From Haliotis rubra (Eukaryota), in the NCBI RefSeq assembly GCF_003918875.1, contig NW_025766002.1:1302001-1366000 (forward strand): a stretch of DNA of 64,000 bases. The letters are read 5' to 3'. Position numbers and translations under genes: made by a program. Every line of letters begins with the position of its first letter. The stretch's first letter is position 1. The notes under the pieces are model-generated. The model had not been told where the DNA came from. It did not search any database and saw only the letters and a program-made list of their open reading frames with translations. Shown in pieces: positions 8,488 to 37,421 of the stretch.

Positions 8488-9005
8488 GGCCCCAACTATG
8501 CTTCTAGGTTTGTCAACATCATACCCGAGACAAAGGTTCATATTCTTGTTCATTTGATTCGCCTCAAATTATACCCGTATACGTATTCGTGGGTTTCGCC
8601 AAAGAACTTCAAAGATATTCAGAACTTTGGGGTTTCCTTCCAGATTAACCTCCCAATTAAATGGATCAGCCTTCACTTCTTCTAAATGTACACACATATT
8701 TGACATAGTTCTGTAGAGGTAAGTCTGCATTGGAAGTCAACGATATTTGCAATCTTTGTTTCCCCCGATTTTATCAAACCATGTCACCAAAAATATGGAA
8801 ATGTAATACATGTGATGTAAGTTACAGGCATTGCTATAACAATTATGCTTTCAACATCTGTATAGAGTTTGTGTTGTATACCTTGACAAGTGAAACATCC
8901 AGCTGGTAATCTAAAAGAATGCGTCCTCTAGGATTGCCGTGGCATGCATTATCTATTGAAAACATTTAAATAGAAGCACAATGTATGATACTGAGCAGAA
9001 GCAAA

Positions 9006-10457
9006 ATGAGTGTCCAAAGAGCTGTTTTGTTCTGGATTGTTGGGACTTTTGTTATCTGCGAGTGTGCAGAGAAACCCCATATTGTGTTTATCGTAGCTGA
9101 TGACCTCGGATGGAACGATGTCGGATTCCGGAACCCTCAAATGATCACCCCTAACCTGGACAGACTGGCCAAAGCTGGTGTCATCCTCAACTCATCTTAC
9201 GTCCAGCCTCTATGCTCGCCTTCCAGAAGTTGTTTCATGTCGGGATATTTCCCTTATCACACTGGTCTACAAGATAGCGTTGTTAAGATAAACGCAGCAA
9301 AATTCCTTCCGGCTAACTTAACAACAATGCCACAGAAACTGAAACAACTTGGCTATGATGCTCACATGGTTGGGAAGTGGCATATTGGCTTCTGTAACTG
9401 GCGGTATACACCTACAGAGAGAGGCTTTGACTCCTACCTTGGATATTACACTGGTGATGAGGACTATTTTACTCGCATGGCACACAATAAGAATGGTACA
9501 GAGGGATTTGATTTTCACTTCAACAAAACTGCCTATAGAGATGACAATGGAACCTATTCTCTGCACATGTGTTTGCCAACAAGGCTGTTGAAATCATTGA
9601 AAACCACGACAATAGTAAGCCACTTTATCTATACCTTCCGTTCCAGGCTGTACATTTACCTCTTGAAGTTCCACCAAAATATGAAAACATGTACAAGAAC
9701 ATAGAAACCATAAATAGAAGGATCTATTGTGGAATGGTAACTGCGTTAGACGAAGCTGTAGGAAATATCACGAAGGCATTAGAAGAAAAAGGTCTCATGG
9801 ACAATCTATTGTTGGTCTTTACAACTGATAATGGTGGCCCTACTTTTGTTGCTGCCAATAACCTGCCCTTACGAGGAGCCAAAAATACTCTCTGGGAAGG
9901 GGGAACGAAAGGGACTGGATTCATCTACAGTAAATCCCTTCTCAAGAAGACGGGCTACCTCAACACTGGAATGATGCATGCAGTGGACTGGTACCCGACA
10001 TTGGTGGAGCTGGCTGGTGGAGAGAACACAGATCCCAACATGGACGGCATCAGTCAGTTCGACATGCTCATCAATGGTGGACCCAGCAAGCGGAAATGAG
10101 TTCGTCTACAACATCTATGACATAAAGGATGCAGCTGCCATAAGATACGGAGATCTCAAGCTCATGCAAGGGAGTCCAGGAGATCACAACGGTTGGGCAC
10201 CTTTGCCACATCTAGGAATAGATGAAGGTTTCTATGAAGCTGATAAGCAAACATTCCCTCCATTCATGCTCTACAACATTACTGCAGATCCAACCGAACA
10301 CTTCGACCTCTCAACTAAGTATCCTGATCTACTAGACATGATGAAGAAGAGGCTAGAGAACTGGAAGAAATCACGAGTTCCGGCACAAGACAATTCTCCT
10401 GATCCTGCAGCTAACCCCAAATACTTCGGTGGTATTTGGAGTCCAGGCTGGTGCTGA
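9006..10457 (+). pseudogene. Arylsulfatase B-like copy 2, full length but with two frameshifts (pseudogene or assembly error)
   Basis: Signal peptide MSVQRAVLFWIVGTFVICEC, then ADDLG, CSPSR, GKWHIG, DNGG and WSPGWC. Relative to paralogs there is an extra CT at 9561-9562 and an extra base at about 10093-10096. Confidence 0.88.
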
Positions 10458-12655: not shown

Positions 12656-13490
12656 TCATGTGTTTTTGGGGATCAAATACACGGCGGATAAGGTAAAAAA
12701 TGTAACAAAAGGATCATCGGAACAACGTAACAACTTTTTCATCACAATATACTCAACAAAATAACTATCATGCAATCCTTTCGTAGTTCCATAACCGGTC
12801 CGGGACGCTTTCACCGCTCTCCACGTACTCTCAGTTTTATTGGTACACGCACCATTCTCTGCATTCACAAATTCCTTACTATGATTCACTGTCACATGCT
12901 CATATCCCATCTCATTCAGTCTGGCATACGCCTTCCAACAATCAGAATGAATTACTGATTCCAGTCGCACCTACTTTCTCAAAAGGGTATCCGCATCACG
13001 CTCTACAACTTCCAAAAACATCCTGTTACTTTCCTTCTCGATACCCCCAAACACCCACACACCATCCACTCGCCTTCCTCGATGAAACTTGCGCTTCCCA
13101 AACTTACTCTCATCAATCTCCACTTCAATCCCTGGCCCACCTATCATCTCATTCTCCTCTTCCATCACAAACAAACACACATCTCTGCAATAATTAAACC
13201 AGTCAACTAAAGTATGATCCGACCCCAGACGCAACTGCTTTTTCACAAAATTCTCTCTCACTTGATAAACCCAATAAAATGTCAATTTCATAAATTTACT
13301 AACGGACAAATGATAATTTAAAAAACAAGAATCACGCTTTGCTACAATCTTATAATTGCATTTTTTATTCGAACAACGCCACACATACCCCTCACTCCGA
13401 CTGGAATCCTTTCGCTTCCCGATACTACCACTGTCAAACCTCACACACTTCCCACTGAAATCTCCAATCAAACGAGCTATATAGAATACA
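12656..13490 (-). pseudogene. Merlin/IS1595-family DDE transposase with an in-frame stop
   Basis: WRCSNKKC zinc-ribbon half, VEIDESKFGKRKFHRGR..G.WVFGGIE, IHSDCWKAY, H.TVNHS..FV and TNKTESTW. An in-frame TAG at 12971-12973 separates ORFs 12971-13687 and 12656-12970. Confidence 0.9.
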
Positions 13491-13765
13491 TTTCTACTTC
13501 CGGGTCGGGGACCCGTAAAGTGCAGCTTTCCCGCGTTTTTGTTCTTATTCCATGCAACGTGATGTATTATGGTTGCTATGATACATAGGTTTTGTAAATA
13601 CACTTTGTTCCTAACATTTGCATAGATTCTGTGGGGTACGTCTTGACAGGTGAAATATCCAGCTGGTAATCTAAAAGAATGTGTCACCCAGGCACGCCAT
13701 GATATGTGTTATCTTATAGAAACCTTTAAATAGAAGCACACTGTACCACACTGAGCAGAAGCAAA

Positions 13766-15208
13766 ATGAGTTTCCTAAGAGCTGTATTTATTGTTTTTGC
13801 TTTTGTAATATGTGAGTGTGCAGAGAAACCTCACATTGTGTTTATCGTAGCTGATGACCTCGGATGGAACGACGTCGGATTTCGAAACCCTCAAATGATC
13901 ACTCCTAACCTGGACAGACTGGCAAAAGCGGGAGTCATCCTAAACTCTTCTTACGTCCAGCCTCTATGTTCGCCCTCCAGAAGCTGCTTCATGTCGGGAT
14001 ATTTCCCTTATCACACTGGACTACAAGATAGCGGTATTCCGATAGACGCAGCAAAATTCCTTCCCGCCAATCTAACAACGATCCCACAGAAACTGAAACA
14101 ACTTGGTTATGATGCTCACATGATTGGAAAGTGGCATTTAGGTTTCTGTAACTGGAAGTATACACCTACAGAGAGAGGCTTTGACTCCTACCTTGGATAT
14201 TACTCTGGTGATGAAGAATATTATAGTCACATGGCTCTGAATCGTAACGGTACAGAGGGATTTGATTTTCACTTCAACAAGACTGCCTTTCGAGACGACA
14301 ATGGGATCTACTCTGCAAATGAGTTCACTAATAGGGCTGTTCAAATCATTGAGGGCCATAACAACAGTAAGCCACTTTATCTGTACCTTCCATTCCAGTC
14401 TGTACATATACCTCTTGAAGTTCCAGCTAAATATGAAAACATGTACAAGAACATTGAAAACCAAAACAGAAGAATATATTGTGGAATGGCGACTGCGTTA
14501 GATGAGGCTGTGGGAAATATCACTAAGGCATTAGAAGACAAAGGTCTCATGGACAATCTATTGGTGGTCTTTACAACAGATAATGGGGGTCCCACATTTG
14601 TTGCTGCCAATAACTTGCCTTTACGAGGAGCCAAAAATACTCTCTGGGAAGGGGGAACGAAAGGAACTGGATTCATCTACAGTAAATCTCTTCTCAAGAA
14701 GACGGGCTACCTCAACACTGGAATGATGCATGCTGTGGACTGGTACCCGACATTGGTGGAGCTGGCTGGTGGAGAGAACACAGATCCCAACATGGACGGA
14801 GTCAGTCAGTACGACATGCTCATCAATGGTGGACCCAGCAAGCGAAATGAGTTCGTCTACAACATCTATGACGAGAGAGAAGCAGCTGCAATCAGGTACG
14901 GAGATCTCAAACTCATGCAAGGGAGTCCAGGAGCTCACAGTGGTTGGGCACCTTTGCCACATCTGGGAATAGATGAAGGTGTCTATGAAGCTGATAAGCA
15001 AACATTTCCTCCATTCATGCTCTACAACATTACTGCAGATCCAACCGAACACTTCGACCTCTCAGCCAAGTATCCTGATCTACTAGAAATGATGAAGAAG
15101 AGGCTAGAGAACTGGAAGAAGTCTCGTGTTCCACCACAGGACACTACCGCTGTGCCTGCAGCGAACCCAAAGTACTTCGGTGGTGTATGGAGTCCTGGGT
15201 GGTGTTGA
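13766..15208 (+). CDS. Arylsulfatase B-like copy 3 (480 aa, intact, intronless CDS)
   Basis: Signal peptide, KPHIVFIVADDLG, formylglycine motif CSPSR, GKWHLG, SVH, DNGG, RGAK, several N-glycosylation sequons and C-terminal WSPGWC. Confidence 0.95.
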   Translation: MSFLRAVFIVFAFVICECAEKPHIVFIVADDLGWNDVGFRNPQMITPNLDRLAKAGVILNSSYVQPLCSPSRSCFMSGYFPYHTGLQDSGIPIDAAKFLPANLTTIPQKLKQLGYDAHMIGKWHLGFCNWKYTPTERGFDSYLGYYSGDEEYYSHMALNRNGTEGFDFHFNKTAFRDDNGIYSANEFTNRAVQIIEGHNNSKPLYLYLPFQSVHIPLEVPAKYENMYKNIENQNRRIYCGMATALDEAVGNITKALEDKGLMDNLLVVFTTDNGGPTFVAANNLPLRGAKNTLWEGGTKGTGFIYSKSLLKKTGYLNTGMMHAVDWYPTLVELAGGENTDPNMDGVSQYDMLINGGPSKRNEFVYNIYDEREAAAIRYGDLKLMQGSPGAHSGWAPLPHLGIDEGVYEADKQTFPPFMLYNITADPTEHFDLSAKYPDLLEMMKKRLENWKKSRVPPQDTTAVPAANPKYFGGVWSPGWC

Positions 15209-15383
15209 TGTCTCACAAAAATACATTTTAATGCATAATAAAATACCAACGGTCACAGCTACTTGTCAAATCGAGTTTCAACTGCATCAAATAAATAATG
15301 CTAAAATAGTGAACATAGAAAGATTACAAGAATGGATCAAACATAATTGAATGTAACCCGGATACCTTCCATTACCACAAATG

Positions 15384-15542
15384 AGTGAGTGATGATGGTT
15401 TTACGCCACGTTTTGCAAAATTCCAGCAATATCACGGCGGGGACACCAATGGGTTTCACACATTTTACCCATGTTGGGAATTGAACCCGGGTCTTTGGCT
15501 TGACGAGCGAACGCTTTAACCACTAGGCTACCCCACCGCCCC
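15384..15542 (-). mobile_element. SINE family A
   Basis: Same body as 12286-12451, with imperfect TSD taccacaaatga / taccataaatga. Confidence 0.85.
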
Positions 15543-17763
15543 TACCATAAATGAACTTTTGGTCACAGAAATATAGGTATCTTTTTCATAAATATGCATC
15601 CACAATATATTATCCATAAATGTCTGAATGAATCCAACAATGCTAGATGTGTAACATCGTTAAAGGCTTCGGGTGGGCTCATGTATTTCCGAGGCTTGAG
15701 AAACGGACAACTAGCAAGTGTGAGGATGCGTCATCGTGTCACTCACCTAATGTGCTACCATCAATGTCGCGCAGACATGGACACAAACGTAACGGATTTC
15801 ATGGAACACATACATCTAACAGTGAACAAAAAACGACAATACATGATAAAGACTCACTGTAATCTGCCACGCCTTTCTGTCCTTCATGATATTTTGGTGC
15901 TCTTGAAGTTTAGGATCAAAATATGTGATATAGGCCAGTTATATATCATTTCGATATTCATTAAACTGTAACTAAAATCGACAAAAAACATTTCCATAAT
16001 TACAATATAGATATGGTACAAAAGAATACGTTGTCTTGACTATCTTCAGAAATAGATTCCCTCTGGTGTAATAGGCAAAATAGCACCGAAAAATAATGGA
16101 TCGCTGAACATCAGCCATGACCCCAGGTGTTCGCGTGAAAACGTAAATACTGTACTGTCCGAAGCCACACAGTGTTAAATATATCTATTAAAGGCAATGT
16201 CCATTCACGTTTCCGACTGTATAATAAGCACATATACTAAGCAGTATGAAAGTGAGCGGGAGTAACTATTTGAGTGGATCACTTAAAATCAGTGATGACA
16301 CCAAATGTTCTATAAAAGAGTAGGCTTCTATAAAAGAGTAGGCTTGCCAGTCCCTACCAGAAGCACCTTACGCACACAATTTGCTACAATTTCGCACACG
16401 TCGTACAACAGCGCTCCTGCCATGCGACGGAGGGTGTCAACAATCCAGACAATCAAGTGTAAAAGTGAAGTGATTCTGATGCTATAATGTACAGAAAAGG
16501 TTTAAATGCATGTCAGTTGTTCCCCATGGACAGAGACAGGGTTATGTGGTACAAATCAAAACAGGTCATTATGTTACTTTCTCAATGATGCGTCAAATTT
16601 GAATATGTTTCCCTGAAAAGATTGCAGAATCGTGTATGTTCTATTACAATTTGGTGGAAAGAGTATGCTTGACTGCACCTGAGTAGTTGTAAAATGTAAT
16701 GGCTCGAGTCTGAAGATGCTCGTCTTAGCTGGAGAGTTGACTATTGACTAGTTGAAGTCATCCCACTTGTGTTGCAATCTTAGGGAGTGTCTTTAGTCAT
16801 TTTGAATCGTTACGCACATATCAAATACTAAATATGAAACGTATGAGGGGATTCATGTGGTCATCCAGTCATACGTTTATCATTTTGGTGGTACTAAAAT
16901 AATAGTAATTATAAGTGCGTTTTGATAACCCAAGCTGCCTGTGAGGCGTCAGAAGGTTAAAAGTCACATGACTTATCCCTCTGGTACCCATTTTCTGCTG
17001 GGTAAACAGAGGCAATTTTGAACAAACTCACATGCCAAAGGTCAAACCACATGTATCACATTTCCTTCTGCACTGATTAGGTCATAATTAGTTTTCTCTT
17101 TCAATTGAGGTAGTGAGTTTAGTTTTACGCCGATTTAGCAATATTCCAAATTTGTTTCTGTGTCATCCTGAATGCCACAAAAGGTGTATTTTATCTCTGA
17201 CCAAAATCCGCTATATTCAACCCAACTTTAGAAACAGTGAAAAGCATTAGAGTGACGTGTAAAAAGATTTACTTTAAAAAGAACAACGATTTTTTGGATA
17301 AGTTATTCACATTTGAAACATGGTGTCGTACGTCTTTCCGTGAGCTTCATGTCATTATGAGTTCAGGTTTTCTTAAATGCAAGGTTTTTTTAGAATCAAA
17401 CATTAAGTTACTCAATTCAACAACACAGTAGCGGTGAAGACGGATGTTTTTACTTAAGCGTTTATGTCAATATATTTCATATTCACTGACTAATTCTAAC
17501 ATTTCTTTGATGGGCTTTTTAGAAGTTGAGTTGATGAAGAATAATGACAATTTTTATGGATATACTTGCTTGGCAACGACATTAGAATCTATGTCGAAAC
17601 GTCGCCTCCACAGAATAAAAGAAGTTTTATATCCATAATAATTATCATTATGCTTAATCCTAACATCCAATGAATCAGCACATCAGTCAAACCAAAATCA
17701 AAATTGTTTTCTGCAAGTACAATGTAGACTGTTCCATTTTGTGCTTCATCAAAAAATGATCGT

Positions 17764-17898
17764 CTGGAAAGTGTCGATGTAAGCATTCCTTCCAAAGATA
17801 AGAATTTAAACTGACAAAAGTAAGGTTAGTCACATGTTATGTTATCTTTGAAACAACCTTATAAACGAATGCGTTTTAAAGCACATGTTAGACACAAC
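17764..17898 (+). promoter_or_regulatory. Conserved upstream block of copy 4 (two GATA sites plus TATA)
   Basis: AGATAAG at about 17796, GTTATCT at 17841 and TATAAA at about 17860. The block is colinear with the upstream regions of copies 6-11. Confidence 0.55.
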
Positions 17899-19341
17899 AT
17901 GCATTTGTCATCAGCTATAAGCCTCCTTTTGACCGCAGTTCTCTGTGACTGTGCAGAGAAACCTCACATTGTTTTCATAGTTGCTGATGACCTCGGATGG
18001 AACGATGTTGGATTTCGGAACCCTCAAATGATCACACCTAACCTTGACAGACTGGCCACAGCGGGAGTCATCCTCAACTCTTCTTACGTCCAGCCCCTGT
18101 GTTCGCCCTCCAGAAACTGCTTCATGTCAGGATATTTCCCTTATCACACTGGACTTCAGGATGGCGTTATTGGGACTGACCAAGCAAAGTTCCTTCCTGC
18201 CAATCTAACAACAATCCCACAGAAACTGAAACAACTTGGCTATGATACTCACATGGTTGGGAAGTGGCATCTTGGCTTCTGTAACTGGAAGTATACACCC
18301 ACAGAGAGAGGCTTTGACTCCTACCTTGGATATTACTCTGGTGCTGAGGACTATTTTACTCACATAAAAGCGCCATCCGATGATGAAGAGGGGCTAGATT
18401 TTCGCTACAACAAGAGTGCCTATAGAGATGCCAATGGAACGTATTCTGCATACGTGTTTGCAGACAGAGCTGTTACAATCATTCAGAACCACGATAACAA
18501 TAAGCCACTTTATATGTACCTTCCATTCCAATCGGTACATGAACCTCTTCAAGTTCCAACTAAATATGAAAACATGTATCAGAACATAGAAACCAAAAAC
18601 AGAAGGGTATATTGTGGAATGGTGACTGCGTTAGACGAAGCAGTTGGCAATATCACGAAGGCATTAGAAGAAAAAGGGCTTATGGACAATCTATTGTTGG
18701 TCTTTACAACCGATAATGGTGGTCCAACATATGATGCTGCTAATAACCTGCCCTTACGAGGAGCCAAAGATACTCTCTGGGAAGGGGGAACGAAAGGAAC
18801 TGGATTCATCTACAGTAAAAACCTTCTCAAGAAGACGGGCTACCTCAATACTGGAATGATGCATGCTGTGGACTGGTACCCGACATTGGTGGAGCTGGCT
18901 GGTGGTGAAAACACAGATCCCGACATGGACGGAGTCAGTCAGTACGACATGCTGATTAATGGTGGACCAAGCAAGCGAAATGAGTTCGTCTACAACATCT
19001 ATGACCACACTGATGCAGCTGCAATACGGTACGGACATCTTAAGCTCATCCAAGGCAGTCCAGGGATTCACAATGGTTGGGCTCCTTTGCCACATCTGGG
19101 AATTGATGAACGTGTTTATGAAGCTGATAACCAAGCGTTCCCTCCCTTCATGCTCTACAACATCACTGCAGATCCAACAGAACACTTTGACCTCTCAGCC
19201 AAATACCCTGAGCTTGTGGACATGATGAAGAAGAGGCTGGTGAATTGGAAGAAGTCTAGTGTCCCGGCCCAAAGCACTTCCCCTGTTCCAAAAGCGAACC
19301 CCAAATACTATGGGGGTGTTTGGAGTCCTGGGTGGTGTTGA
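17899..19341 (+). CDS. Arylsulfatase B-like copy 4 (480 aa from the ATG at 17899)
   Basis: All sulfatase motifs are intact. The start was chosen by alignment of the signal peptide MHLSSAISLLLTAVLCDC and the caacATG context. Confidence 0.95.
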   Translation: MHLSSAISLLLTAVLCDCAEKPHIVFIVADDLGWNDVGFRNPQMITPNLDRLATAGVILNSSYVQPLCSPSRNCFMSGYFPYHTGLQDGVIGTDQAKFLPANLTTIPQKLKQLGYDTHMVGKWHLGFCNWKYTPTERGFDSYLGYYSGAEDYFTHIKAPSDDEEGLDFRYNKSAYRDANGTYSAYVFADRAVTIIQNHDNNKPLYMYLPFQSVHEPLQVPTKYENMYQNIETKNRRVYCGMVTALDEAVGNITKALEEKGLMDNLLLVFTTDNGGPTYDAANNLPLRGAKDTLWEGGTKGTGFIYSKNLLKKTGYLNTGMMHAVDWYPTLVELAGGENTDPDMDGVSQYDMLINGGPSKRNEFVYNIYDHTDAAAIRYGHLKLIQGSPGIHNGWAPLPHLGIDERVYEADNQAFPPFMLYNITADPTEHFDLSAKYPELVDMMKKRLVNWKKSSVPAQSTSPVPKANPKYYGGVWSPGWC

Positions 19342-20259
19342 CAGAAGCTAGGATGGGATACAAATTAAAAGTGCTCGGCATAGTTATTAAATATCCAAGA
19401 TAGACTTTTTCGCATTTGATTGTCTGCAATTAGATTCGTATTTCTGATCATTTATTCGGATTTGTTGGTGACACCTTGAAACCAAAATGTAGAAAGTTAG
19501 ATACAAGTAAAGATGTGTTTCGTCAACAAATTACCAGTTGTCCTGTTTGGTGTAAGGGGTGACTTAAGAAGTGAGACGGTCAGCCTTGCTGACTTTCGCT
19601 GATGATTGTGATTTCAGTTACTGACCCACCGTTACTGTCACCGACTTACGAGAATGTGGTGGTTAGACTTACTGACTTGGTTGATGCTCATGATATGAAT
19701 AACTGGATTGTCTGGTCAAGACTCTAATATTGAAATAGAACCGACAAAACCCTATCCCTTTCTTACGGATGTGGAAAGGGTTTTGTCGCTTCTATTTACA
19801 GCTGCATGATGTTGTTTGTAAACAAATCGCGTCCGGACAACTGCCGTCACATAACTGGAATTTGTTGGGTGTGGCTTTAAACAAACAATCAATAAAATGG
19901 TAAAACACCCAGTGGGACAGGTCGTCTAAGGCGCTATAATTCGCTGTTAAGAGTTGTCTTCCTGATATGTATGTTTATATCGTAGGAATAAAACCTTACT
20001 CACTCACTCACTCACCAGCCACTCTCCAACTCACTCACACACTCACTCGCTTCTATACTACTGGTCTATTGATGTCAAACTCTGTGCAAGCATACACAGG
20101 AGCACTAAATAAGTACCATCTGAACCGAAAGGTAAGTGTTTTATTGGTACGAGCAAGCGATCATACCCCGGCATACTAGAATGCACATGTAAAGCACGTG
20201 CTTCAAACTATATCTCTACAGCTCTGGGACGCATGTTCACGTGCTGCGAAGCCGCCAAG

Positions 20260-20630
20260 TATATACGGGTACACTTTTCATAAATGCAATATGCGCACAT
20301 AAGTGTTCTGAACTGATTTAGAATAACTTTTCTTCACAAGTCAAGACGCGGACTTTCAGAAAATACATGATGGCAGAACAATGGTATAGTATACATGGAG
20401 AAGGGATGTCCCATCGCAACATCCTGTCCTGTCAGTGCTTACTTGAACATTTACCACGCAGTTGTTAGTCCACTTGTGAGGAAGCCCTCGGACATCGATA
20501 AAGCAGAGGATCCTGAAGACTGGAAAAGACAAATGACCATGATGACCGAGTCCAAATTAATCTCGTAAGACGCAATACAATGACCCATGCCGAAGAACTG
20601 CACCGGCAGTGGAGAATGGGAGTGTGACTA
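20260..20630 (+). mobile_element. Possible degenerate Tc1-like transposase N-terminal remnant
   Basis: Frameshifted HTH-like reading (GMSHRNI...HDDRV..NLVRRNTMTHAEELHRQW). Confidence 0.35.
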
Positions 20631-20635
20631 AAGTA

Positions 20636-21387
20636 CTGTCGGAAATAGAAAAAAAACTGTTTTTAGGCTGTTACTCTGTATCCCTAAGATTTACACAATT
20701 GCAAATAGTATATGTCGCAATAATCCACATCGGCCTAACTTGGCGTCAGTGGGATGCTTAATTGGATATCCAGAAAGCACGTTTACTCGTACAATCGGGC
20801 AAAAAATACGTATAGCTGCATGAGATGCATGAGGTACAAGGGTCCATCTCAAAGATATTTGTTCTTTTTCATGTGAGTTGAATATGTCTCATTTAACATC
20901 TTGTGTGTCTTTCTTTCATAAGGTTTATGTGAAAGAGTATGATACCCATAGAAAAGCTTAAATCAAACCATCGTATTTTATGTCTCAAAATATATATGTG
21001 GCATGACCACCCGAAGATCAACAGGGCCCCGTTCCTCAAAGCGATCGTAGCGCTACGACAGTCGTAAGTCTATGTTAAAGTATGGGAGTTACGATCACCT
21101 TAGCGCTACGATCGCTTTGAGGAACGGGGCCCTGGGACTGCATATTTTTTGTAAATTGTTATGACATGCCGTTTACTTCCCCAGTGTAATTCCCCTAAAG
21201 GATTATCTCATCTTAGCTGGTATCTCTATCCAGATATCTACCCAGTCCGACCCCAACCACCGTCTGCGACACCCGTCCGGGTTTTGCTTTTGAGACGACC
21301 CCTCCTACCGGTTTCTTTTTGTAGTGATAGTCAGACTCCAAAGTAGCTACATCCTTAACAGTTTCAGTATTAAAGTTATCATTGTAA
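20636..21387 (-). mobile_element. Truncated TIR element related to 61914-63208, abutting and replacing the 5' end of copy 5
   Basis: Same terminus gta-ctgtcggaaat..aaaaa.tg.ttttt and shared internal sequence cgtcc.gg..ttgcttttgagacg (VSKA.PGR on the minus strand). Confidence 0.65.
21022..21134. mobile_element. Palindromic MITE (PIF/Harbinger-like ends)
   Basis: Perfect inverted repeats of about 34 bp, cagggccccgttcctcaaagcgatcgtagcgcta / tagcgctacgatcgctttgaggaacggggccctg. Confidence 0.85.
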
Positions 21388-22806
21388 CGCCTTTTGTTGA
21401 CTGTAGTTCTCTCTCTGTGTGTGCAGAGAAGCCTCACATTATATTGATGCTGATGACCTAGGCTGGAACGATGTTGGGTTTCGAAACCCTCAAATGATCA
21501 CACCTAACCTGGACAGACTGGCCAAAGCGGGAGTCATCCTCAACTCTTCCTATGTCCAGCATTTGTGTTCGCCCTCAAGACACTGCTTCGTGTCAGGATA
21601 TTTCACATATCACACAGGACTACAAGATGACGTTATTGCAGTAAACGAAGCAAAACACCTACCGGCCAATCTAACAACAATCCCTCAGAAATGAAACAAC
21701 TTGGCTATGATGCTCACATGGTTGGGAAGTGGCATCTTGGTTTCTGTAACTGGAAGTATACAACCACAGAGAGAGGCTTTGACTCCTATCTTGCATGTTA
21801 TTGTGGTGCTGAAGGATATTTTAACCACACGATAAGGGGAGGCCATGGTGAAGTAGGACTGGATTTTCGCTATAACAAGACTGTCTATAGAGATGCCAAT
21901 GGAACCTATTCTGCACACGTGTTTGCAGACAGAGCTATTGAAATCATTCAGAACCACGACAATAGTAAGCCACTTTATCTGTACCTTCCATTCCAGTCTG
22001 TACATATACCTCTTGAAGTTCCAGCTAAATATGAAAACATGTACAAGAACATTGAAAACCAAAAGAGAAGAATCTACTGTGGAATGGTGAGTGCTTTAGA
22101 CGAAGCTGTAGGAAATATCACTCAGGCATCAGAAGAAAAAGGCCTCTTGGACAATCTATTGTTGGTCTTTACAACTGATAATGGGGGTCCCACATTTGTT
22201 GCTGTCAATAATCTGCCTTTACGGGGAGCCAAAACTACTCTCTGGGAAGGGGGAACGAAAGGAACTGGATTCATCTACAGTAAAAACCTTCTCAAGAAGA
22301 CTGGCTACCTCAACACTGGAATGATGCATGCGGTGGACTGGTACCCGACATTGGTGGAGCTGGCTGGTGGAGAGAACACAGATCCCAACATGGACGGAGT
22401 CAGTCAGTTCGACATGCTCATCAATGGTGGACCAAGCAAGCGGAATGAGTTCGTCTACAACATCTATGACGAGATTGATGCAGCTGCAATCAGGTACGGA
22501 GATCTCAAGCTCATCCAAGGGAGTCCAGGAATTCACAACGGTTGGGCACCTTTGCCACATCTGGGAATTGATGAAGGTGTCTATGAAGCTGATAACCAAA
22601 CGTTCCCTCCCTTCATGCTATACAACATTACTGCAGATCCAACCGAACACTTCGACCTCTCAGCCAAATACCCTGAGCTTGTGGATATGATGAAGAAAAG
22701 ACTGGAGAACGGGAAGAAATCCCGTGTCCCGGCCCAGGACCCTTCTGTTGTTCCAAGAGCGAACCCGAAATACTATGGCGGTGTTTGGAGTCCTGGATGG
22801 TGCTGA
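21388..22806 (+). pseudogene. Arylsulfatase B-like copy 5, pseudogene
   Basis: Start codon and promoter are missing. There is a deletion of about 4 nt at about 21445 and a 1-nt deletion at about 21690, plus substitutions at otherwise invariant residues (QHLC, FTYH, YTTTE, LACYC, ENGKK). Confidence 0.92.
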
Positions 22807-23156
22807 AACAAACTAAGATGGTACACACATTCAATGTGCAAGACATATTTTTGCAACAGATTCTCTGTAAATGCTATTGACATTGACTGCATTTGCCAAC
22901 CGCAGTGTTTATTTACGAACATTTGGTGCAATATGTATGAAAATAATAAACAAAATAATAATCGATCTATACATTTTAGTCTGGATATTATCTGGTTTTC
23001 TTCATCAGGTGAGCATTCCGTGAAGATTCCATAGGATGTAATAAGCGCGTTACTCCCGCAATCAACCACCTTCTCACTCTCATGCACAAACACACTTACT
23101 TACTTTTTTCTCGATATCAAAATAGAAGCAAGCGGATTTAAAGAAGATTATATTTT

Positions 23157-23298
23157 CGTGAGTGAGTGTGGTTTTAACAATTATCGAAAAATGTCACGGC
23201 AGGGGACATAAAAAATAGACTTCACAGTTTGTACTCGAAAATCCGGTCTTTGACTCGACGAGCAAATGCTTTAATCCATCGGCTTTCCCACCGTCCCT
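23157..23298 (-). mobile_element. Old SINE family A copy shared with the 3' flanks of copies 7 and 8 (about 37880-38000, about 41942-42070)
   Basis: gtgagtgagtgtggttttaacaa...ctttcccaccgtccct lies at the homologous position in three flanks. Confidence 0.7.
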
Positions 23299-24300
23299 AG
23301 ATGTTTTGTTTTAGCAGTTGGCAACTTGTAAGTATTAAGTTGGAGCACGTGTACCTTAGTCATGCAAAGTTTGCATCTCTTAGCTGTCCTTCGATCGATA
23401 AGTAGATTTGCCTTTGGTCCTTTATATTAAGAAAATATCCATTCCTTTGGGCTTTACTGTCCCTGACATACCGTGAAGTAGCTTCAATACTGTTCAAACG
23501 GGCGGTGTTAAGTTCAACTCACTTTCAAACAGCCTTGTAGAAGAAATAGGAATTAGTGCCCTGGTGTATTGATTGTAATTTTGACAATTGGCCGAAGGGA
23601 AAACTGTTTCGAATCTTTGGTGGTGTTAGTGGCAGCTTCTCTTCGCCGTTGGTGTCGCTGTTTAGAACATATATAAGATATCAGTTGAAGATATCAGTGT
23701 CCGTGACAACATTAACACTGTACTGTTAGCCATAAAATGTGAAACTAGTCGTAGCCAGGCAACAACACACTCTGCATCACCTTCACTGAAACATTATGAA
23801 AGTGAAAACACTTCGGCTACTGAGAAAAAGATTAAATTCCCGGGGTCCAAGTGCCGCCGTCTCCGACCGGGTCCTGAAGCCCATGAAGCCAACGCATCAA
23901 TGCAAATTGCCTTCTCAGAAACATCACTGAAAAGGATGCGTTCAGACCTATTTGTGTGATTTTTAACGGATTTATATTTTAATGTTTCACATGAACCCAT
24001 TTTTTTTTTCTCGAGAGCGTGACATGAGTTGTACTGTGATAAATCTCAGGCCAAATACATGAGAGATGGCAGGTATGAAAATATGTTCTAACCAACGTTC
24101 ATTTATGTTGTATTCTTTCGACATCAAAATCAAATTAAGGAGTTTCTGTATAAACACGTTGCTGAGGGTTATGAGATATTGTAACTGACATATTTAACTA
24201 ATCACTGATCTGGAACTAACTGTCAACTATCCATTAGTTAATAACTAAATGTCAACATTAAATTCCTGTACAAATGTTACCATTACCTGGTGTACCAATA

Positions 24301-31440: not shown

Positions 31441-31751
31441 CTTGTGATACACTTGCTTTCATACAGCAATTATGTCAGTAGTGTTTATACATTTCATAAG
31501 TTTCATTAAATTTTGACATCAATAATTTGGTGCTTATGAAATACAAAATTAGCTGTGCGTTTATAGGCCATTGCATATACAATCATGACGTTCTAGTTAA
31601 CGTGTGATATAACCATAGTATGGAATGTGTCGGCGTAGGCATTTCTTCCAATGACACGAATTCGAGCTGATAAAACTAGGGTTAGTCATGAGTTAGGTTA
31701 TCTTTGAACTCTTTCATACGACTGTATTTCACTGCATACACCAGACACAAC

Positions 31752-33194
31752 ATGAATTTCACATCAGCTGTGTGCCTTTTTGTTACTGTAGTTCTCTCTG
31801 TGTGTGCAGAGAAACCTCACATTATATTTATAGTTGCTGATGACCTTGGATGGAATGATGTTGGATTCCGGAACCCTCAAATGATCACACCTAACCTGGA
31901 CAGACTGGCCAAAGCGGGAGTCATCCTCAACTCTTCTTATGTCCAGCCTGTGTGTTCGCCCACAAGAAATTGCTTCATGTCAGGATATTTCCCCTATCAT
32001 ACTGGACTACAAGATGACATTATTGATGTAAATGAAGCGAAACACCTACCGGTCAACCTAACAACAATCCCACAGAAACTGAAACAACTTGGCTATGATA
32101 CCCACATGGTTGGGAAGTGGCATCTTGGCTTCTGTAACTGGAAGTATACACCCACAGAAAGAGGCTTTGACTCCTTTCTTGGATATTACTCTGGTGCTGA
32201 AGGCTATTTTAACCACACGCGAAGGGGAGGACGTGATGAAGTAGGACTGGATTTTCGCTATAACAAGACTGTCAATAGAGACGCCAATAGAACCTGTTCT
32301 ACACGCGTATTTATGCACAGAGCTATTGAAATCATTCAGAACCACGACAACAGTAAACCACTTTATCTCTATCTTCCATTTCAGTCTGTACATGCACCTC
32401 TGGAAGTTCCACCTAAATTTGAAAACATGAACAAGAACATAGAAAACATAAGAAGAAGGATCTATTGTGGAATGGTGAGTATGTTAGACGACGCTGTTGG
32501 TAATATCACTGAGGCATTAGAAGAAAAAGGTCTCATGGACAATCTATTGTTGGTCTTTACAACTGATAATGGTGGGCCTACATATACAGCATCTAATAAC
32601 TTGCCTTTACGCGGCGCCAAAAATACTCTCTGGGAAGGGGGCACAAAAGGAGCTGGATTCATCTACAGTAAAACCCTTCTCAAGAAGACGGGCTACCTCA
32701 ACACTGGAATGATGCATGCTGTGGACTGGTACCCGACATTGGTGGAGCTGGCTGGTGGAGAGAACGCAGATCCCAACATAGACGGAGTCAGTCAGTATGA
32801 CATGCTCATCAATGGTGGACCCAGCAAGCGAAATGAATTCGTCTACAACATCTATGATGAAAGGGAAGCAGCTGCTATCAGGTACGGAGATCTCAAGCTC
32901 ATGCAAGGGAGTCCAGGAGATCACAACGGTTGGGCTCCTTTGCCACATCTGGGAATTGATGAAGGTGTCTATGAAGCTGATAACCAAGTGTTCCCTCCCT
33001 TCATGCTCTACAACATTACTGCAGATCCAACGGAACACTTCGACCTCTCAGCCAAGTACCCTGATGTACTGGACATGATGAAGAAGAGGCTGGAGAACTG
33101 GAAGAAATCCCGTGTCCCGCCCCAAGACCCTTCTCCTGTGCCAAGAGCGAACCCGAAATACTATGGTGGTGTTTGGAGTCCTGGGTGGTGTTGA
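31752..33194 (+). CDS. Arylsulfatase B-like copy 6 (480 aa)
   Basis: ATG at 31752 (caacATG), signal peptide, CSPTR motif, all other motifs intact. Confidence 0.95.
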   Translation: MNFTSAVCLFVTVVLSVCAEKPHIIFIVADDLGWNDVGFRNPQMITPNLDRLAKAGVILNSSYVQPVCSPTRNCFMSGYFPYHTGLQDDIIDVNEAKHLPVNLTTIPQKLKQLGYDTHMVGKWHLGFCNWKYTPTERGFDSFLGYYSGAEGYFNHTRRGGRDEVGLDFRYNKTVNRDANRTCSTRVFMHRAIEIIQNHDNSKPLYLYLPFQSVHAPLEVPPKFENMNKNIENIRRRIYCGMVSMLDDAVGNITEALEEKGLMDNLLLVFTTDNGGPTYTASNNLPLRGAKNTLWEGGTKGAGFIYSKTLLKKTGYLNTGMMHAVDWYPTLVELAGGENADPNIDGVSQYDMLINGGPSKRNEFVYNIYDEREAAAIRYGDLKLMQGSPGDHNGWAPLPHLGIDEGVYEADNQVFPPFMLYNITADPTEHFDLSAKYPDVLDMMKKRLENWKKSRVPPQDPSPVPRANPKYYGGVWSPGWC

Positions 33195-35981
33195 TCCAAA
33201 CTGTAACTGGTTACATATCATATATTACAGATTTTGTCTTCACATTTAATTTTCTGTAAAAAGATATTGGAAGAGGTGCAAATTGGTATGCGACTTCATT
33301 GGTTATACACAAACATGTCGAATGATCCTTAAAGGATAAATAAAAATAACTATTAAATGTACAGATGTAGTTTACTGAGTCAAGGTATTACGTGCTTTCT
33401 CAATTAAGAGCTTCAAGATGAAGGTACGGGCTAGAATTATTCTTCAGCAATCAATGCTTGTTGCACAAAACGAGAAACGGGACTATGTGGTAAGGTAGAG
33501 GCATACCTTCCTATCAAGAACGGTGGGTGGACTCTGGCGATAGCAAACACTAGATTGTCTGGTCCAGATCTGATTATTTATCGGTGTCTTGAATATTGCT
33601 GGGAGTTAAATAAAGAAAATGCTCGAACATTTGAGGGTCTGCCATTTGAGGGATGCTAAATCTTTTGAATGTGTGTATGAATGATCTCAGCTTCGACATG
33701 ACTATATTTACGCGCCATTGGTTGAAAACTACTTAGAGCGAAGCAAAACAATTTTTGCACTAATTCACTGAACCATCAACTCAGGAAAAACAACTAAACC
33801 AATCACTAACTGCCGCAGATTTCAACAGCTGTGAATTTTGTTTGGAGTAATTATAATTTCAGAACTTAAATTTGTGTAAAGGACACAGCAGCTGTGACAA
33901 TTATATGAATGGACCATTGAAAATCAGTGATGACACGAGATGTTTGCGAAAAGGGTAAGAATGTTCTGCCTTTCAGGTAGCAATCGCAATTCGTACAGTT
34001 TGCCTTAAAATGTAAGTAAGAACACCCCTTTATTTACAGAGTGCCGCGTGACGGCCCTCTGTAAATAAACCAAATAATCAGGTGATCGGTGAGCCTGTAA
34101 GTCCAATTGTTATTTTTAATTGTGGCGGCTACGTAGAAGTGCAGAGAAGACATTCCAGTTTGTGTCTGTAATGGACTACATTTGACCAAGAAATGCAGTT
34201 TGCTTCCCTTGGCCGTGTGGGATCGAATCTCCTACTGGCCCAGAAAACTCAGAAACATTATCTTCGGTAGTTTATGGACACCATTCGCATGTATTTCCCA
34301 AAGTTGTAAACCTCTCAGACATGTTTTACTCAGGGTTTCCTCTCCCTCAAAGCTAAAACATGGTGAAACAATTGAAACAATGTTCACAGGGGCGGCACAG
34401 GGCCTGACTCAATGTCTCCAAAACATCTTTTTTTATAAACATATGGACATATGTGCTCCTGTGAATTGTATGCTTGTGGCAGATGTTATATTCCATTGAG
34501 TTCAAGTCGCTTACAATATATACAAGTTTCTTTTTGTTTTTTCTCGGGTAGGCGTGTTCCCCATAACATTAACATTGTTATGACCGTATGCACTGTGCCT
34601 CTGTGTCTCTTTGAAGTAGAATCTTAATCGTAGCAAAGCAAAGACAAATGCCTTTTCTACCACTCAAAGAATTCAGAGAGTAATTTATGTTTACAGAAGG
34701 AAACCTTCAGGATCTTTTTGCACTGTATTGGTCTGTTATTGTACTTTATTTTTTTATAATTTCTGGGTCTGTACTCATGTGCAAGCAGTATTTAGGGAAA
34801 TGGAATCTAAGTAGCTAAAGTTCTGTCAACAACAAAAAAACTGACAATACATGTTGTTTTCATAAAATAAACTGACGTACAAAAGAAAGTTTTTGGTGTT
34901 TTGGGATTATAAGTCACAAACATTGTGCATGTAGAGGCAAAGCAGCACATATATTTATCTAGTGCTCTGTAATATTAACTGAAGAGAATGTGTGTATTTA
35001 ACCTTGATCAAGACCAATTGCTTCACAAATACTTTATAAACCAACTTTCATTTCAATATTCTGTATTTGGACAACAAACATTTTTCTGTGCAAAGACATA
35101 GGAAATAGTTATAAAAATTATGACGGGAGATATCTTTGACAAGCTATTGACAAGTCTATAATTTATAGTCAACATTCAATTTCTGCGCAAATGATGCTAT
35201 GTGGTGTATCAGTATGCCATTCCATTATTTCATCGAAATGTTTGGTTGTTTAATAAAAGCCGTACGTCATCTTACAGTTACATCTATATAATGATTGTCA
35301 GTTGACACAATGGTGCCTATAAATATATGCGACAAACCCTTCCAAAATCGTTGAAAAAAGTTTAAGGAATACCTGTCCAAAGATTTTGATTACTACAAAA
35401 GCATGTGTTGTAGAATCCATATGGAAATTATCCCAGGTGCTCATTAAACACCCCTGGCCGTATCCTGGGCCACAAAGCAGTGCAGAAGTTAAAATACACT
35501 TTGATTCGCTGGGCCCGGCAATATATTTATTATAAATTATGTGTAACATCAACATATACTGGACTTGGAGGCGAGGAGCCCGTCTTGAGAAACTGGTAGG
35601 TAAATATGTCGTTGATTTTTTGACTGCATTGTGGTTTTGGTTTTGGTTTTTAACATATGGCACCCAGCTGTAAAAGTCGTTGGGGTAAATGCGGATCCTT
35701 TGAAAACAGCGATTGTGTCAATGGCTTTCATAGTGAAGGTGTAAAACCTGATATCATATCCTTCTAAAGCAATGGCAATACAAAATTAATACTGGGGCTT
35801 CTAGCCACGAGATATTCAATCTAGACTGCTCTCTTTAATGCGTGGTGTGGAATGTGTCTATGTAAGCATTCCTTCCGATGATAAGAATACCAGCTGACAA
35901 AAATACAGTTATTCGCGAGTCACGTTATCTTTGGAAGAACCCTTATATACGACACTGTTCTGTCGCGCACAGCACATAAAC

Positions 35982-37421
35982 ATGAATTACATATCATTTG
36001 TGTGCCTTATCGTGACCTCAGTTCTCTGTGAATGTGCAGAGAAACCTCACATTATATTTATTGTCGCCGATGACCTGGGATGGAACGATGTTGGCTATCG
36101 GAATCCTCAAATGATCACACCTAACCTGGACAGACTGGCCAAAGCGGGAGTCATCCTCAACTCTTCCTACGTCCAACCTTTGTGTTCACCCTCAAGAAAC
36201 TGCTTTATGTCGGGGTATTTCCCCTATCACACTGGACTACAGGATGACGTTATTGCCGTAAACGAAGCAAAACACCTACCGGCCAATCTAACAACAATTC
36301 CTCAGAAACTGAAACAACTTGGCTATGATGCTCACATGGTTGGGAAGTGGCACCTTGGCTTCTGTAACTGGAAGTATACACCCACAGAGAGAGGCTTTGA
36401 CTCCTATCTTGGATACTACTCTGGTGCAGAGGAGTATTTTACCCACATCCATCAGAGATCAAGCGAAGTGGGGCTGGATTTTCGCTTTAACAAGACTGTC
36501 TATAGAGACGCCAATGGAACGTATTCTGCTAATGTGTTTGCAGACAGAGCTATTGAAATCATTAGAAGTCATGACAACAGTAAGCCACTTTATCTGTACC
36601 TTCCATTCCAGTCTGTACATGAACCTCTTGAGGTTCCAGCTAAATATGAAAACATGTACAAGAACATAGAAACCATAAGCAGAAGGGTCTATTGTGGAAT
36701 GGTGAGTGCGTTAGACGAAGCTGTTGGTAATATCACTCAGGTATTAGAAGAAAACGGTCTCATGGACAATCTACTGTTGGTCTTTACAACAGATAATGGT
36801 GGGCCTACATATACAGCATCTAATAACTTGCCTTTACGGGGAGCCAAAAATACTCTCTGGGAAGGTGGGACGAAAGGAACTGGATTCATCTACAGTAAAA
36901 ACCTTCTGAAGAAGACAGGCTACCTCAACACTGGAATGATGCATGCTGTGGACTGGTACCCGACATTGGTGGAGTTGGCTGGTGGAGAAAACACAGATCC
37001 CAACATGGACGGAGTCAGTCAGTACGACATGCTCATCAATGGTGGACCCAGCAAGCGGAATGAGTTCGTCTACAACATCTATGACGACAGGGAAGCAGCA
37101 GCTATCAGGTTTGGAGATCTCAAACTCATGCAAGGGAGTCCAGGAGATCACAATGGTTGGGCTCCTTTGCCACATTTGGGAATTGATGAAGGTGTCTATG
37201 AAGCTGATAACCAAGTGTTCCCTCCCTTCATGCTCTACAACATTACTGCAGATCCAACCGAACACTTCGACCTCTCAGCCAAGTACCCTGATCTACTGGA
37301 CATGATGAAGAAGAGGCTGGAGAACTGGAAGAAATCCCGTGTCCCTGCTCAGGACCCTTCTCCTGTTCCAAAAGCGAACCCAAAATACTATGGTGGTGTT
37401 TGGAGTCCTGGATGGTGCTAA
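35982..37421 (+). CDS. Arylsulfatase B-like copy 7 (479 aa)
   Basis: ATG at 35982, signal peptide MNYISFVCLIVTSVLCEC, all motifs intact. Confidence 0.95.
   Translation: MNYISFVCLIVTSVLCECAEKPHIIFIVADDLGWNDVGYRNPQMITPNLDRLAKAGVILNSSYVQPLCSPSRNCFMSGYFPYHTGLQDDVIAVNEAKHLPANLTTIPQKLKQLGYDAHMVGKWHLGFCNWKYTPTERGFDSYLGYYSGAEEYFTHIHQRSSEVGLDFRFNKTVYRDANGTYSANVFADRAIEIIRSHDNSKPLYLYLPFQSVHEPLEVPAKYENMYKNIETISRRVYCGMVSALDEAVGNITQVLEENGLMDNLLLVFTTDNGGPTYTASNNLPLRGAKNTLWEGGTKGTGFIYSKNLLKKTGYLNTGMMHAVDWYPTLVELAGGENTDPNMDGVSQYDMLINGGPSKRNEFVYNIYDDREAAAIRFGDLKLMQGSPGDHNGWAPLPHLGIDEGVYEADNQVFPPFMLYNITADPTEHFDLSAKYPDLLDMMKKRLENWKKSRVPAQDPSPVPKANPKYYGGVWSPGWC

What the first reader, a model, noticed from the sequence alone, without database searches (positions are those of the whole stretch)
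14366..22806. Patchwork gene conversion: copy 5 is a mosaic of several paralogs
Seen: about 100 bp of copy 5 (about 21964-22064, including the diagnostic catatacct and attgaaaaccaaaa) match copy 3 (about 14366-14467) exactly, and gataatgggggtcccacatttgttgctg is also shared by copies 3 and 5. Copy 5's N-terminal loops (DDVIAVNEAKHLP, GAEGYFNHT..GG) group with copies 6/7, its gacgagattgatgcagctgca...ctcatccaa segment with copy 1, and its 3' flank with copies 7/8. Inference: short conversion tracts shuffle variable segments, and pseudogenes may act as donors.
Basis: partly seen in the sequence, partly recalled or inferred. Interest (0 to 1): 0.7.

Follow-up and report, generated by a model that had tools for sequence, protein, structure and literature searches.

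The report
Gene-conversion mosaic in abalone sulfatase pseudogene
One broken copy in a row of abalone sulfatase genes carries short stretches copied from sister copies, which is a clear but ordinary example of gene conversion between neighbouring duplicates.

Summary
The window is blacklip abalone (Haliotis rubra) DNA. It holds 11 of 15 tandem, intronless arylsulfatase-B-like genes.

Copy 5 (21392-22806) matches copy 3 exactly over 101 bp (21964-22064 = 14366-14466). A second 28-bp stretch is shared only by these two copies.

This exceeds chance:
- A Sawyer-type run test gives an array-wide p of 0.009.
- A 3SEQ-type exact test gives p = 3e-9 (9e-6 after Bonferroni).
- The PHI test gives p <= 5e-4.
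- Segment trees conflict, and AU tests reject the swapped placements at p = 0.0003-0.0005.
- Three synonymous changes found only in copies 3 and 5 argue against convergence.

Copy 5 is a pseudogene. A dispersed repeat cuts off its 5' end, and it has 4-bp and 1-bp deletions. Its backbone belongs to the copy 6-12 group, with short upstream-type patches of about 30-110 bp. In the best-resolved patch it is the recipient, so "pseudogene as donor" is not supported.

The red abalone array, from a separate assembly, is also mosaic.

Read support is only partial. The public contigs are short unitigs, though one from another study and organism label links copy-3-type and copy-5-only letters. An assembly artefact therefore remains possible, at about 10%.

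This is a known mechanism in an already annotated gene family, so interest is low to moderate.

The parts
13766..15208 (+). Copy 3: intact ARSB-like sulfatase gene (480 aa) of the upstream-type group. It is the likely donor lineage of the two patches in copy 5.
   Evidence: ORF. It groups with u1-u3 and c2 (99/99).
14366..14466 (+). The stretch in copy 3 that is identical to copy 5 at 21964-22064 (patch 1).
   Evidence: 101-bp exact match.
14579..14606 (+). The stretch in copy 3 that is identical to copy 5 at 22177-22204 (patch 2).
   Evidence: This 28-mer occurs only at these two places in the window.
20817..21389 (.). Dispersed repeat (thousands of first-look candidates genome-wide) that abuts the truncated 5' end of copy 5. 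It contains an internal inverted 110-bp duplication.
   Evidence: Searches give many 86-92% matches on other contigs. One search shows very high k-mer depth at 21000-21370. One search finds no start codon or 5' homology upstream.
21392..22806 (+). Copy 5: a sulfatase pseudogene. It has no start codon and lacks most of the signal peptide. It has a 4-bp deletion near 21448/21449 and a 1-bp deletion after 21691. The only remaining open frame is 21691-22806.
   Evidence: Alignment gaps; three-frame reading. A unitig of run X2 spans the 4-bp deletion without a gap.
21964..22073 (+). Patch 1: a copy-3-type tract in copy 5. Its minimum extent is 22006-22071 and its maximum is 21964-22073, with 1 difference in 110 bp. 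It covers the residue after the catalytic His and the 'NIE..' variable cluster.
   Evidence: The letters 22006A, 22053T and 22071A are shared only by copies 3 and 5. Run test.
22177..22213 (+). Patch 2: an upstream-type tract in copy 5. It has a 28-bp exact match unique to copy 3, the copy-3-only synonymous 22185G, and five consecutive upstream-group diagnostic sites (22196-22213). It lies beside the TDNGG metal-binding motif.
22435..22514 (+). Tract identical to upstream copy u3, which lies outside the window (81 bp).
   Evidence: Pairwise run p = 0.009, not significant array-wide.
22515..22681 (+). Stretch of copy 5 carrying letters otherwise found only in copies 1 and 4 (22515, 22668, 22677, 22681).
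   Evidence: The tree for segment 1171-1400 places c5 with (c1,c4) at 99/95, and AU rejects c5+c3 (p = 0.004) and c5+c6 (p = 0.03).
22807..23725 (+). 3' flank of copy 5, closest to the flanks of copies 7 and 8 (about 77-85% over the first 290 bp, about 70% beyond).
   Evidence: with the tree (c5,(c7,c8)) at 100/100.

Best explanation
The window holds part of a 15-copy tandem array of single-exon arylsulfatase-B-like genes in Haliotis rubra. Copy 5 is a dead member of the downstream subgroup (copies 6-12).

Short non-allelic (interlocus) gene-conversion events have pasted stretches of other copies into it. In such an event a break in one copy is repaired using a misaligned neighbouring paralogue as template.

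- Two patches of about 66-110 bp and 28-37 bp come from the copy 3 / upstream lineage.
- At least one further stretch in the 3' third comes from the u3 / copy 1 / copy 4 lineage.

Patch 1 is very recent (1 difference in 110 bp), whereas the rest of copy 5 differs from copy 3 by about 13%.

The process is not special to copy 5. The whole array, and the separately assembled H. rufescens array, show the same kind of mosaicism. The conversions are patchy and do not homogenise the genes as a whole.

Shown here: the mosaic structure, its statistical significance, the conflicting trees, and copy 5 as recipient in patch 2. Inferred: the repair mechanism, the direction of patch 1, and the order of conversion and pseudogenisation.
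For: - Eleven copies lie in the window and 15 in the contig, at 85-97% identity. They are sulfatases by Pfam (PF00884, E = 4e-54). The organism follows from near-identical annotated H. rubra proteins.
- There is a 101-bp exact match and a unique 28-mer.
- Run-length permutation test: c3-c5 is the top pair of 105, with array-wide p = 0.009.
- 3SEQ-type exact test with c5 as child: p = 3.3e-9, or 9e-6 after Bonferroni; 9 triplets are significant.
- PHI test: p <= 5e-4, and p = 0.001 at third codon positions.
- Segment trees: c5+c6 at 97/96* in alignment columns 101-665, against c5+c3 at 98/96* in columns 666-930. The swapped placements are rejected by AU at 0.0005 and 0.0003.
- The synonymous letters 22053T, 22071A and 22185G are shared only by c3 and c5 and are absent or nearly absent in 9 H. 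rufescens copies.
- Group-diagnostic sites show c5 as downstream-type except for upstream-type letters at 22064 and 22196-22213.
- H. rufescens copies are also mosaic: r9 gives p = 7e-8.
- Reads: unitigs specific to c5 occur in runs X1 and X2, and one spans the 4-bp deletion. A 75-nt unitig of run X4 (another study and organism label) differs from c5 at 3 sites but from every paralogue at 7 or more. One of the three differences, at 22089, is listed away from the contig end. The other two go unlisted and so most likely sit near its ends. On that reading it joins 22064A and 22071A to the c5-only 22065G and 22077C.
Against: - No read or contig spans a whole gene. The Logan contigs here are 60-175 nt, so the linkage of diagnostic sites more than 31 bp apart is unproven.
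- The assembly was built from short Nanopore reads (1-2 kb median) with a Platanus/DBG2OLC hybrid step, then Racon and Pilon polishing (PMC6774278). Such a pipeline could in principle blend paralogues.
- The segments for the AU tests were chosen after seeing the data, so those p-values are optimistic.
- The direction of patch 1 is not resolved.
- Several of the shared nonsynonymous states (the Ile after the catalytic His, the 'ENQ' codons) also occur in some H. rufescens copies. Recurrent change at these hypervariable codons therefore contributes something.
Confidence: 0.8

Rival explanations
1. Assembly or polishing chimera. The patches were written into copy 5 (or copy 3) by consensus building or Pilon/Racon polishing with reads of another paralogue, and do not exist in the animal.
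For: - The assembly pipeline is at risk of this: 1-2 kb median Nanopore reads, a Platanus bubble-merging step, DBG2OLC, Racon and Pilon.
- Patch 1 is about the length of one read and is 100% identical.
- No spanning read could be examined.
Against: - Both loci exist in the assembly, so reads of copy 3 should map to copy 3.
- Letters found only in c3 are interleaved with letters found only in c5 within 31-mer range (22053-22077), and no alternative letter is reported there in X1 or X2.
- A unitig from another study and organism label (X4) is closer to c5 than to any paralogue there, at 3 differences against 7 or more.
- Patch 2 is flanked by c5 singletons.
- The same kind of mosaicism appears in the separate H. 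rufescens assembly, and in H. rubra with c5 removed.
Confidence: 0.1
2. Unequal crossing-over alone. Copy 5 is a hybrid gene created by one or two crossovers between misaligned array members, without any gene conversion.
For: - Tandem arrays do expand and contract by unequal exchange.
- The larger-scale discordance would fit one crossover: the 5' half is sister to copy 6, the 3' third goes with copies 1, 4 and u3, and the 3' flank goes with copies 7 and 8.
Against: Patches 1 and 2 are internal, 30-110 bp long, and bounded on both sides by downstream-type or unrelated sequence. There are 16 differences in the 105 bp between them. That would need four closely spaced crossovers, which amounts to conversion.
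Confidence: 0.05
3. Parallel substitution under selection. The shared states arose independently at hypervariable, substrate-facing codons.
For: - The patches cover variable clusters next to catalytic residues.
- The same amino-acid states recur in some H. rufescens copies.
- The variable loops have raised pN/pS, up to 0.94.
Against: - Three of the c3/c5-only states are synonymous.
- The run remains significant at third codon positions (p = 0.004).
- The 101 bp of complete identity includes many sites that vary among other copies.
- Copy 5 is a pseudogene, so selection on its protein is unlikely.
- No window has pN greater than pS.
Confidence: 0.03

Closest known systems
Interlocus (non-allelic) gene conversion in tandem gene families, as in primate globin and opsin genes and MHC genes, detected by GENECONV/3SEQ-type tests (general knowledge)
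   Same: Paralogues 85-97% identical lie a few kb apart. Short internal tracts (tens to a few hundred bp) of near-identity sit in diverged surroundings. Trees conflict along the gene, and run and triplet tests are significant.
   Different: Nothing essential differs. The recipient here is a dead gene, so the events have no protein consequence. Direction and single-molecule proof are missing.
Pseudogene-to-gene conversion (CYP21A1P to CYP21A2 in humans; chicken immunoglobulin V pseudogene donors; general knowledge)
   Same: Functional and broken paralogues sit in one array and exchange short tracts.
   Different: The direction is the opposite where it can be read: the pseudogene receives. No tract carrying pseudogene-specific letters into an intact copy was demonstrated.
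Concerted evolution of the abalone VERL repeats (discussed in PMC2704960, found)
   Same: It is the same genus, with tandem repeated coding units and within-species homogenisation. Here the 3' half of the sulfatase genes clusters by species at 100/99*.
   Different: VERL repeats are homogenised almost completely. The sulfatase copies keep a dS of 0.2-0.5, about equal to the divergence of their flanks, so exchange is patchy rather than wholesale.
Arylsulfatase B / N-acetylgalactosamine-4-sulfatase family (Pfam PF00884, PF14707)
   Same: The domain match is strong, the Cys-x-Pro-x-Arg motif is present, and the proteins have signal peptides. Close relatives are annotated as arylsulfatase B-like in several Haliotis species.
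   Different: The genes are single-exon and multiplied into lineage-specific arrays. Substrates are unknown.

Membership tests
Interlocus gene conversion | Donor and recipient are paralogues in one genome with enough identity to pair | tested here: met
   There are 15 copies within 95 kb of one contig, at 85-97% identity.
Interlocus gene conversion | An internal fragment of excess identity, bounded on both sides by ordinary divergence, beyond permutation expectation | tested here: met
   A 101-bp exact match sits in a pair that is 86.5% identical overall. Run test: array-wide p = 0.009. 3SEQ-type exact test: p = 3e-9.
Interlocus gene conversion | Phylogenetic conflict between the tract and the rest of the gene | tested here: met
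   c5+c6 at 97/96* against c5+c3 at 98/96*. AU rejects the swapped placements at 0.0005 and 0.0003. The segments were chosen post hoc.
Interlocus gene conversion | Shared derived states include silent sites, which excludes convergence | tested here: met
   22053T, 22071A and 22185G are synonymous, found only in c3 and c5, and seen in 0-1 of 9 H. rufescens copies. Third-position run p = 0.004.
Interlocus gene conversion | The mosaic is present on single DNA molecules and is not an assembly product | tested here: inconclusive
   Only unitigs of 60-175 nt were available. They support local linkage, including in a second study, but do not span a gene.
Interlocus gene conversion | Non-reciprocal transfer with an identifiable direction | tested here: inconclusive
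   In patch 2, c5 is the recipient (five upstream-type sites in a downstream backbone). The direction of patch 1 is unresolved.
Pseudogene-templated conversion (pseudogene as donor) | Letters specific to the pseudogene are copied into an intact paralogue | tested here: inconclusive
   Triplets with u3 or c6 as child and c5 as inner parent are significant, but the direction cannot be told. The clearest event runs the other way.
Array-wide concerted evolution | Paralogues within a species are more alike than orthologues between species | tested here: inconclusive
   Species clades have 98/98* support for the whole gene and 100/99* for the 3' half. They are not recovered in the 5' half or the middle, where AU cannot reject them either (p = 0.33 and 0.12).
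Array-wide concerted evolution | Coding synonymous divergence well below the divergence of flanking non-coding DNA | tested here: not met
   For c5-c7, dS is 0.34 against flanks at 72-74% identity. For c9-c10, dS is 0.20 against flanks at 82-84%. dS is about equal to the flank distance.
Sulfatase (PF00884), ARSB-like | Sulfatase domain above Pfam's gathering score | tested here: met
   184 bits against a cut-off of 25.
Sulfatase (PF00884), ARSB-like | Cys-x-Pro-x-Arg formylglycine motif and the DD metal-binding motif | tested here: met
   CSPSR and ADDLG can be read in all intact copies. CSPSR is also kept in the shifted frame of copy 5.
Sulfatase (PF00884), ARSB-like | Sulfate-ester hydrolase activity and substrate | not testable with these tools
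   This needs expression and an enzyme assay.

The most novel reading that the evidence does not exclude
The array evolves in two modes. The 3' half is homogenised within species by frequent conversion. The 5' half keeps paralogue lineages older than the H. rubra / H. rufescens split. Short conversion tracts move the hypervariable cassettes next to the active site (after the catalytic His, beside TDNGG, and the N-terminal loops) between copies. Together this would generate new substrate-pocket combinations in digestive sulfatases of a seaweed grazer, with dead copies serving as a reservoir of cassettes.
Probability: 0.12. Interest if true: 0.55.

Novelty: new member of a known kind. Interest (0 to 1): 0.25.

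Why it matters
This is a well-documented example of short-tract gene conversion in a mollusc gene family.

It warns that trees, orthology calls and selection tests on abalone sulfatase arrays, and probably on other abalone tandem families, will be misled if recombination is ignored.

If the patches really shuffle residues lining the active site among working copies, that could help explain how grazers diversify enzymes for sulfated algal polysaccharides. That link is untested here, and the focal recipient is a dead gene.

Tried and rejected
1. Dating the patches with H. rufescens orthologues. Nine copies were fetched, but all cluster by species, so copy 5 and copy 3 have no one-to-one orthologue.
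2. Testing for wholesale concerted evolution by comparing dS with flank divergence. They are about equal, so this is rejected.
3. Looking for orthologous flanks between species. Matches are only 70-78% and not one-to-one, so the result is uninformative.
4. Sliding pN/pS for diversifying selection. No window exceeds 1.
5. Searching for the missing 5' end of copy 5 beyond the repeat. None was found between copies 4 and 5.
6. Read-level phasing. The apparent 'inserted C' at 21691 comes from paralogue-derived contigs that are identical on both sides, so it says nothing about copy 5.
7. Relaxed constraint in copy 5. Its singleton N:S ratio (14:15) is like that of the intact copies, so there is no clear signal of long decay.
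8. A second protein search for copy-5-like proteins in other data sets was not run, because of its cost and low expected yield for a pseudogene.
Full report
**What is there**

The window carries eleven + strand copies of one gene:
- c1 at 1-427 (3' part only)
- c2 at 8961-10457
- c3 at 13715-15208
- c4 at 17848-19341
- c5 at 21320-22806
- c6 at 31701-33194
- c7 at 35931-37421
- c8 at 39992-41482
- c9 at 46350-47844
- c10 at 53743-55237
- c11 at 59073-60567

The product is a sulfatase: PF00884 at E = 4e-54, plus the sulfatase C-terminal region below its cut-off. It has the CSPSR motif and a signal peptide.

Near-identical proteins are annotated as arylsulfatase B-like in Haliotis rubra on a 9.43-Mb contig. 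The spacers hold mobile-element remains, including a reverse transcriptase at 49361-50461.

A search of the window's own genome shows that the array has 15 close copies on one contig. Three lie upstream of the window (u1, u2, u3), together with the rest of c1. One lies downstream (c12). The next relatives are only about 72% identical, so no better donor is hidden elsewhere.

Only c2 and c5 are broken.

**Copy 5 is a pseudogene**

- Homology to the other copies starts at about 21392. That is directly after a dispersed repeat (20817-21389) with thousands of candidate copies genome-wide.
- No start codon, signal-peptide start or promoter-side homology exists between c4 and c5.
- A 4-bp deletion near 21448/21449 and a 1-bp deletion after 21691 shift the frame twice.
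- A unitig of run X2 covers 21410-21508 without mismatch or gap, while every paralogue differs there at 12 or more positions. The 4-bp deletion is therefore in reads.

**The observation**

- The 101-bp identity between c5 (21964-22064) and c3 (14366-14466) is real. It is the longest exact match of c5 to any copy.
- The 28-mer at 22177 and 14579 is unique to these two copies.
- c3 and c5 are only 86.5% identical overall.

**Is it more than chance?**

I ran three tests that allow for the choice of pair and breakpoints.

1. *Run-length test.* I took the longest run of concordant polymorphic sites for each of the 105 pairs and permuted the order of sites 10,000 times. c3-c5 is the best pair, with 41 sites over alignment columns 669-768. 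Pairwise p = 1e-4 and array-wide p = 0.009.
2. *Triplet test.* This is a 3SEQ-type maximum-descent test with exact p-values. For c5 as child, with c6 as the outer parent and c3 as the inner parent, p = 3.3e-9, or 9e-6 after correction for 2730 triplets. Nine triplets with c5 as child remain significant.
3. *PHI test.* p <= 5e-4 for all sites, p = 0.001 for third codon positions, and still p <= 5e-4 without c5.

**Segment trees**

| Alignment columns | Placement of c5 | AU rejections |
|---|---|---|
| 101-665 | sister to c6 (97/96*) | c5+c3, p = 0.0005 |
| 666-930 | sister to c3 (98/96*) | c5+c6, p = 0.0003 |
| 1171-1400 | with c1 and c4 (99/95*), u3 beside them | c5+c3, p = 0.004; c5+c6, p = 0.03 |

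The segments were chosen after seeing the data, so the p-values are optimistic.

**Fine structure**

At 54 sites that separate the upstream subgroup (u1-u3, c2) from the downstream subgroup (c6-c12), c5 is downstream-type throughout. The exceptions are 21916, 21963, 22064, five consecutive sites at 22196-22213, and 22479.

- Letters shared only by c3 and c5 lie at 22006, 22053, 22071 and 22185. The last three are synonymous and occur in 0-1 of nine H. rufescens copies.
- Between 22074 and 22176, c5 and c3 differ at 16 of 105 positions, which is as much as anywhere else.
- There are therefore two separate short patches. Patch 1 has a minimum extent of 22006-22071 and a maximum of 21964-22073, with 1 difference in 110 bp. 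Patch 2 spans 22177-22213.
- In patch 2, c5 is the recipient. The direction of patch 1 is open.
- Patch 1 is younger than the youngest duplication in the array (c7/c8, 2.8% apart).
- Further along, c5 equals u3 over 81 bp (22435-22514). It then carries c1/c4-type letters up to 22681.
- The 3' flank of c5 groups with c7 and c8 at 100/100.

The patches coincide with variable clusters next to catalytic residues: the residue after the catalytic His, and the stretch beside TDNGG. Because c5 is dead, this has no consequence for its product.

**Is the mosaic real or an assembly product?**

The published assembly used wtdbg and DBG2OLC with Platanus contigs, Nanopore reads of 1-2 kb median length, Racon and Pilon (PMC6774278).

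What they show:
- c5-specific sequence is present in runs X1 and X2.
- No alternative letters are reported in X1 or X2 between 21726 and 22285.
- A 75-nt unitig of run X4 (another study and organism label) covers 22047-22121. It differs from c5 at 3 positions but from every paralogue at 7 or more.
- One of its three differences, at 22089, is listed away from the contig end. The other two go unlisted and so most likely sit near its ends. On that reading it joins 22064A and 22071A to the c5-only letters 22065G and 22077C.

This is local support, not gene-long phasing.

Independent support for the process comes from H. rufescens. Nine copies from a separate assembly are also significantly mosaic; for example r9 gives p = 7e-8.

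I put the chance of an artefact at about 10%.

**How far does conversion go?**

It is not wholesale. Pairwise dS roughly equals the divergence of the flanks: c5-c7 has dS 0.34 against flanks 72-74% identical, and c9-c10 has dS 0.20 against 82-84%. Overall pN/pS is 0.2, and no window exceeds 1.

There are still hints of region-dependent homogenisation:
- pS is two to three times lower in columns 1000-1400 than in the 5' third.
- All copies cluster by species for the whole gene (98/98*), and in the 3' half alone at 100/99*.
- The 5' half and the middle do not recover species clades, although AU cannot reject them there.
- In the 5' half, downstream H. rubra copies are closer at silent sites to some H. 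rufescens copies (0.38-0.48) than to their own upstream subgroup (0.5-0.68).

**Verdict**

The core inference, that short conversion tracts make copy 5 a patchwork, is well supported. The idea that pseudogenes act as donors is not supported.

The mechanism is textbook interlocus gene conversion, and the genes are already annotated. The finding is therefore a sound but ordinary example. The caveat is that single-molecule proof is still missing.

Noticed in passing
window 8961-10457: Copy 2 is a second pseudogene. A 2-bp and a 1-bp insertion relative to all other copies split it into three overlapping ORFs.
   Followed up: partly
window 31701-33194: Copy 6 has an intact ORF but the most private amino-acid changes: 21 nonsynonymous against 10 synonymous singletons, 13 of them at codons invariant in the other 14 copies. 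This could be relaxed constraint or a change of function.
   Followed up: no
whole array; alignment columns 951-1522 against 111-700: Species-specific clustering of H. rubra and H. rufescens copies is strong only in the 3' half (100/99*). Silent-site diversity is 2-3 times lower at columns 1000-1400. This may be region-limited concerted evolution.
   Followed up: partly
window 20817-21389: An abundant dispersed repeat lies at the truncated 5' end of copy 5, with an internal inverted 110-bp duplication (21026-21134). K-mer depth is very high in all four runs.
   Followed up: partly
window 12656-13687 (- strand): Two adjacent ORFs (104 and 238 aa) between copies 2 and 3 look transposase-like by eye. 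The 238-aa ORF has no Pfam hit.
   Followed up: no
window 48733-51090 (- strand): A LINE-type element lies between copies 9 and 10. It has a 366-aa reverse-transcriptase ORF (PF00078, E = 1e-26) with neighbouring ORFs on the same strand.
   Followed up: no
L012:949-1066 (upstream of copy u1, outside the window): A 118-bp relic of the sulfatase coding region (query positions 1164-1281, 86% identity) lies about 450 bp upstream of copy u1.
   Followed up: no
L033:7394-8302 and L035:6221-6753 (H. rufescens): Degenerate sulfatase fragments lie between intact genes of the red abalone array. One gene model there (P0014, 374 aa) does not translate straight from its locus, so that array also holds decayed members.
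   Followed up: no
window 21691: All four runs have contigs with an extra C after 21691. These contigs fit copies 8, 10, 11 and 12, which are identical to copy 5 on both sides. In run X1 no contig without the C was reported at this place, so the 1-bp deletion of copy 5 is not confirmed in that run.
   Followed up: partly
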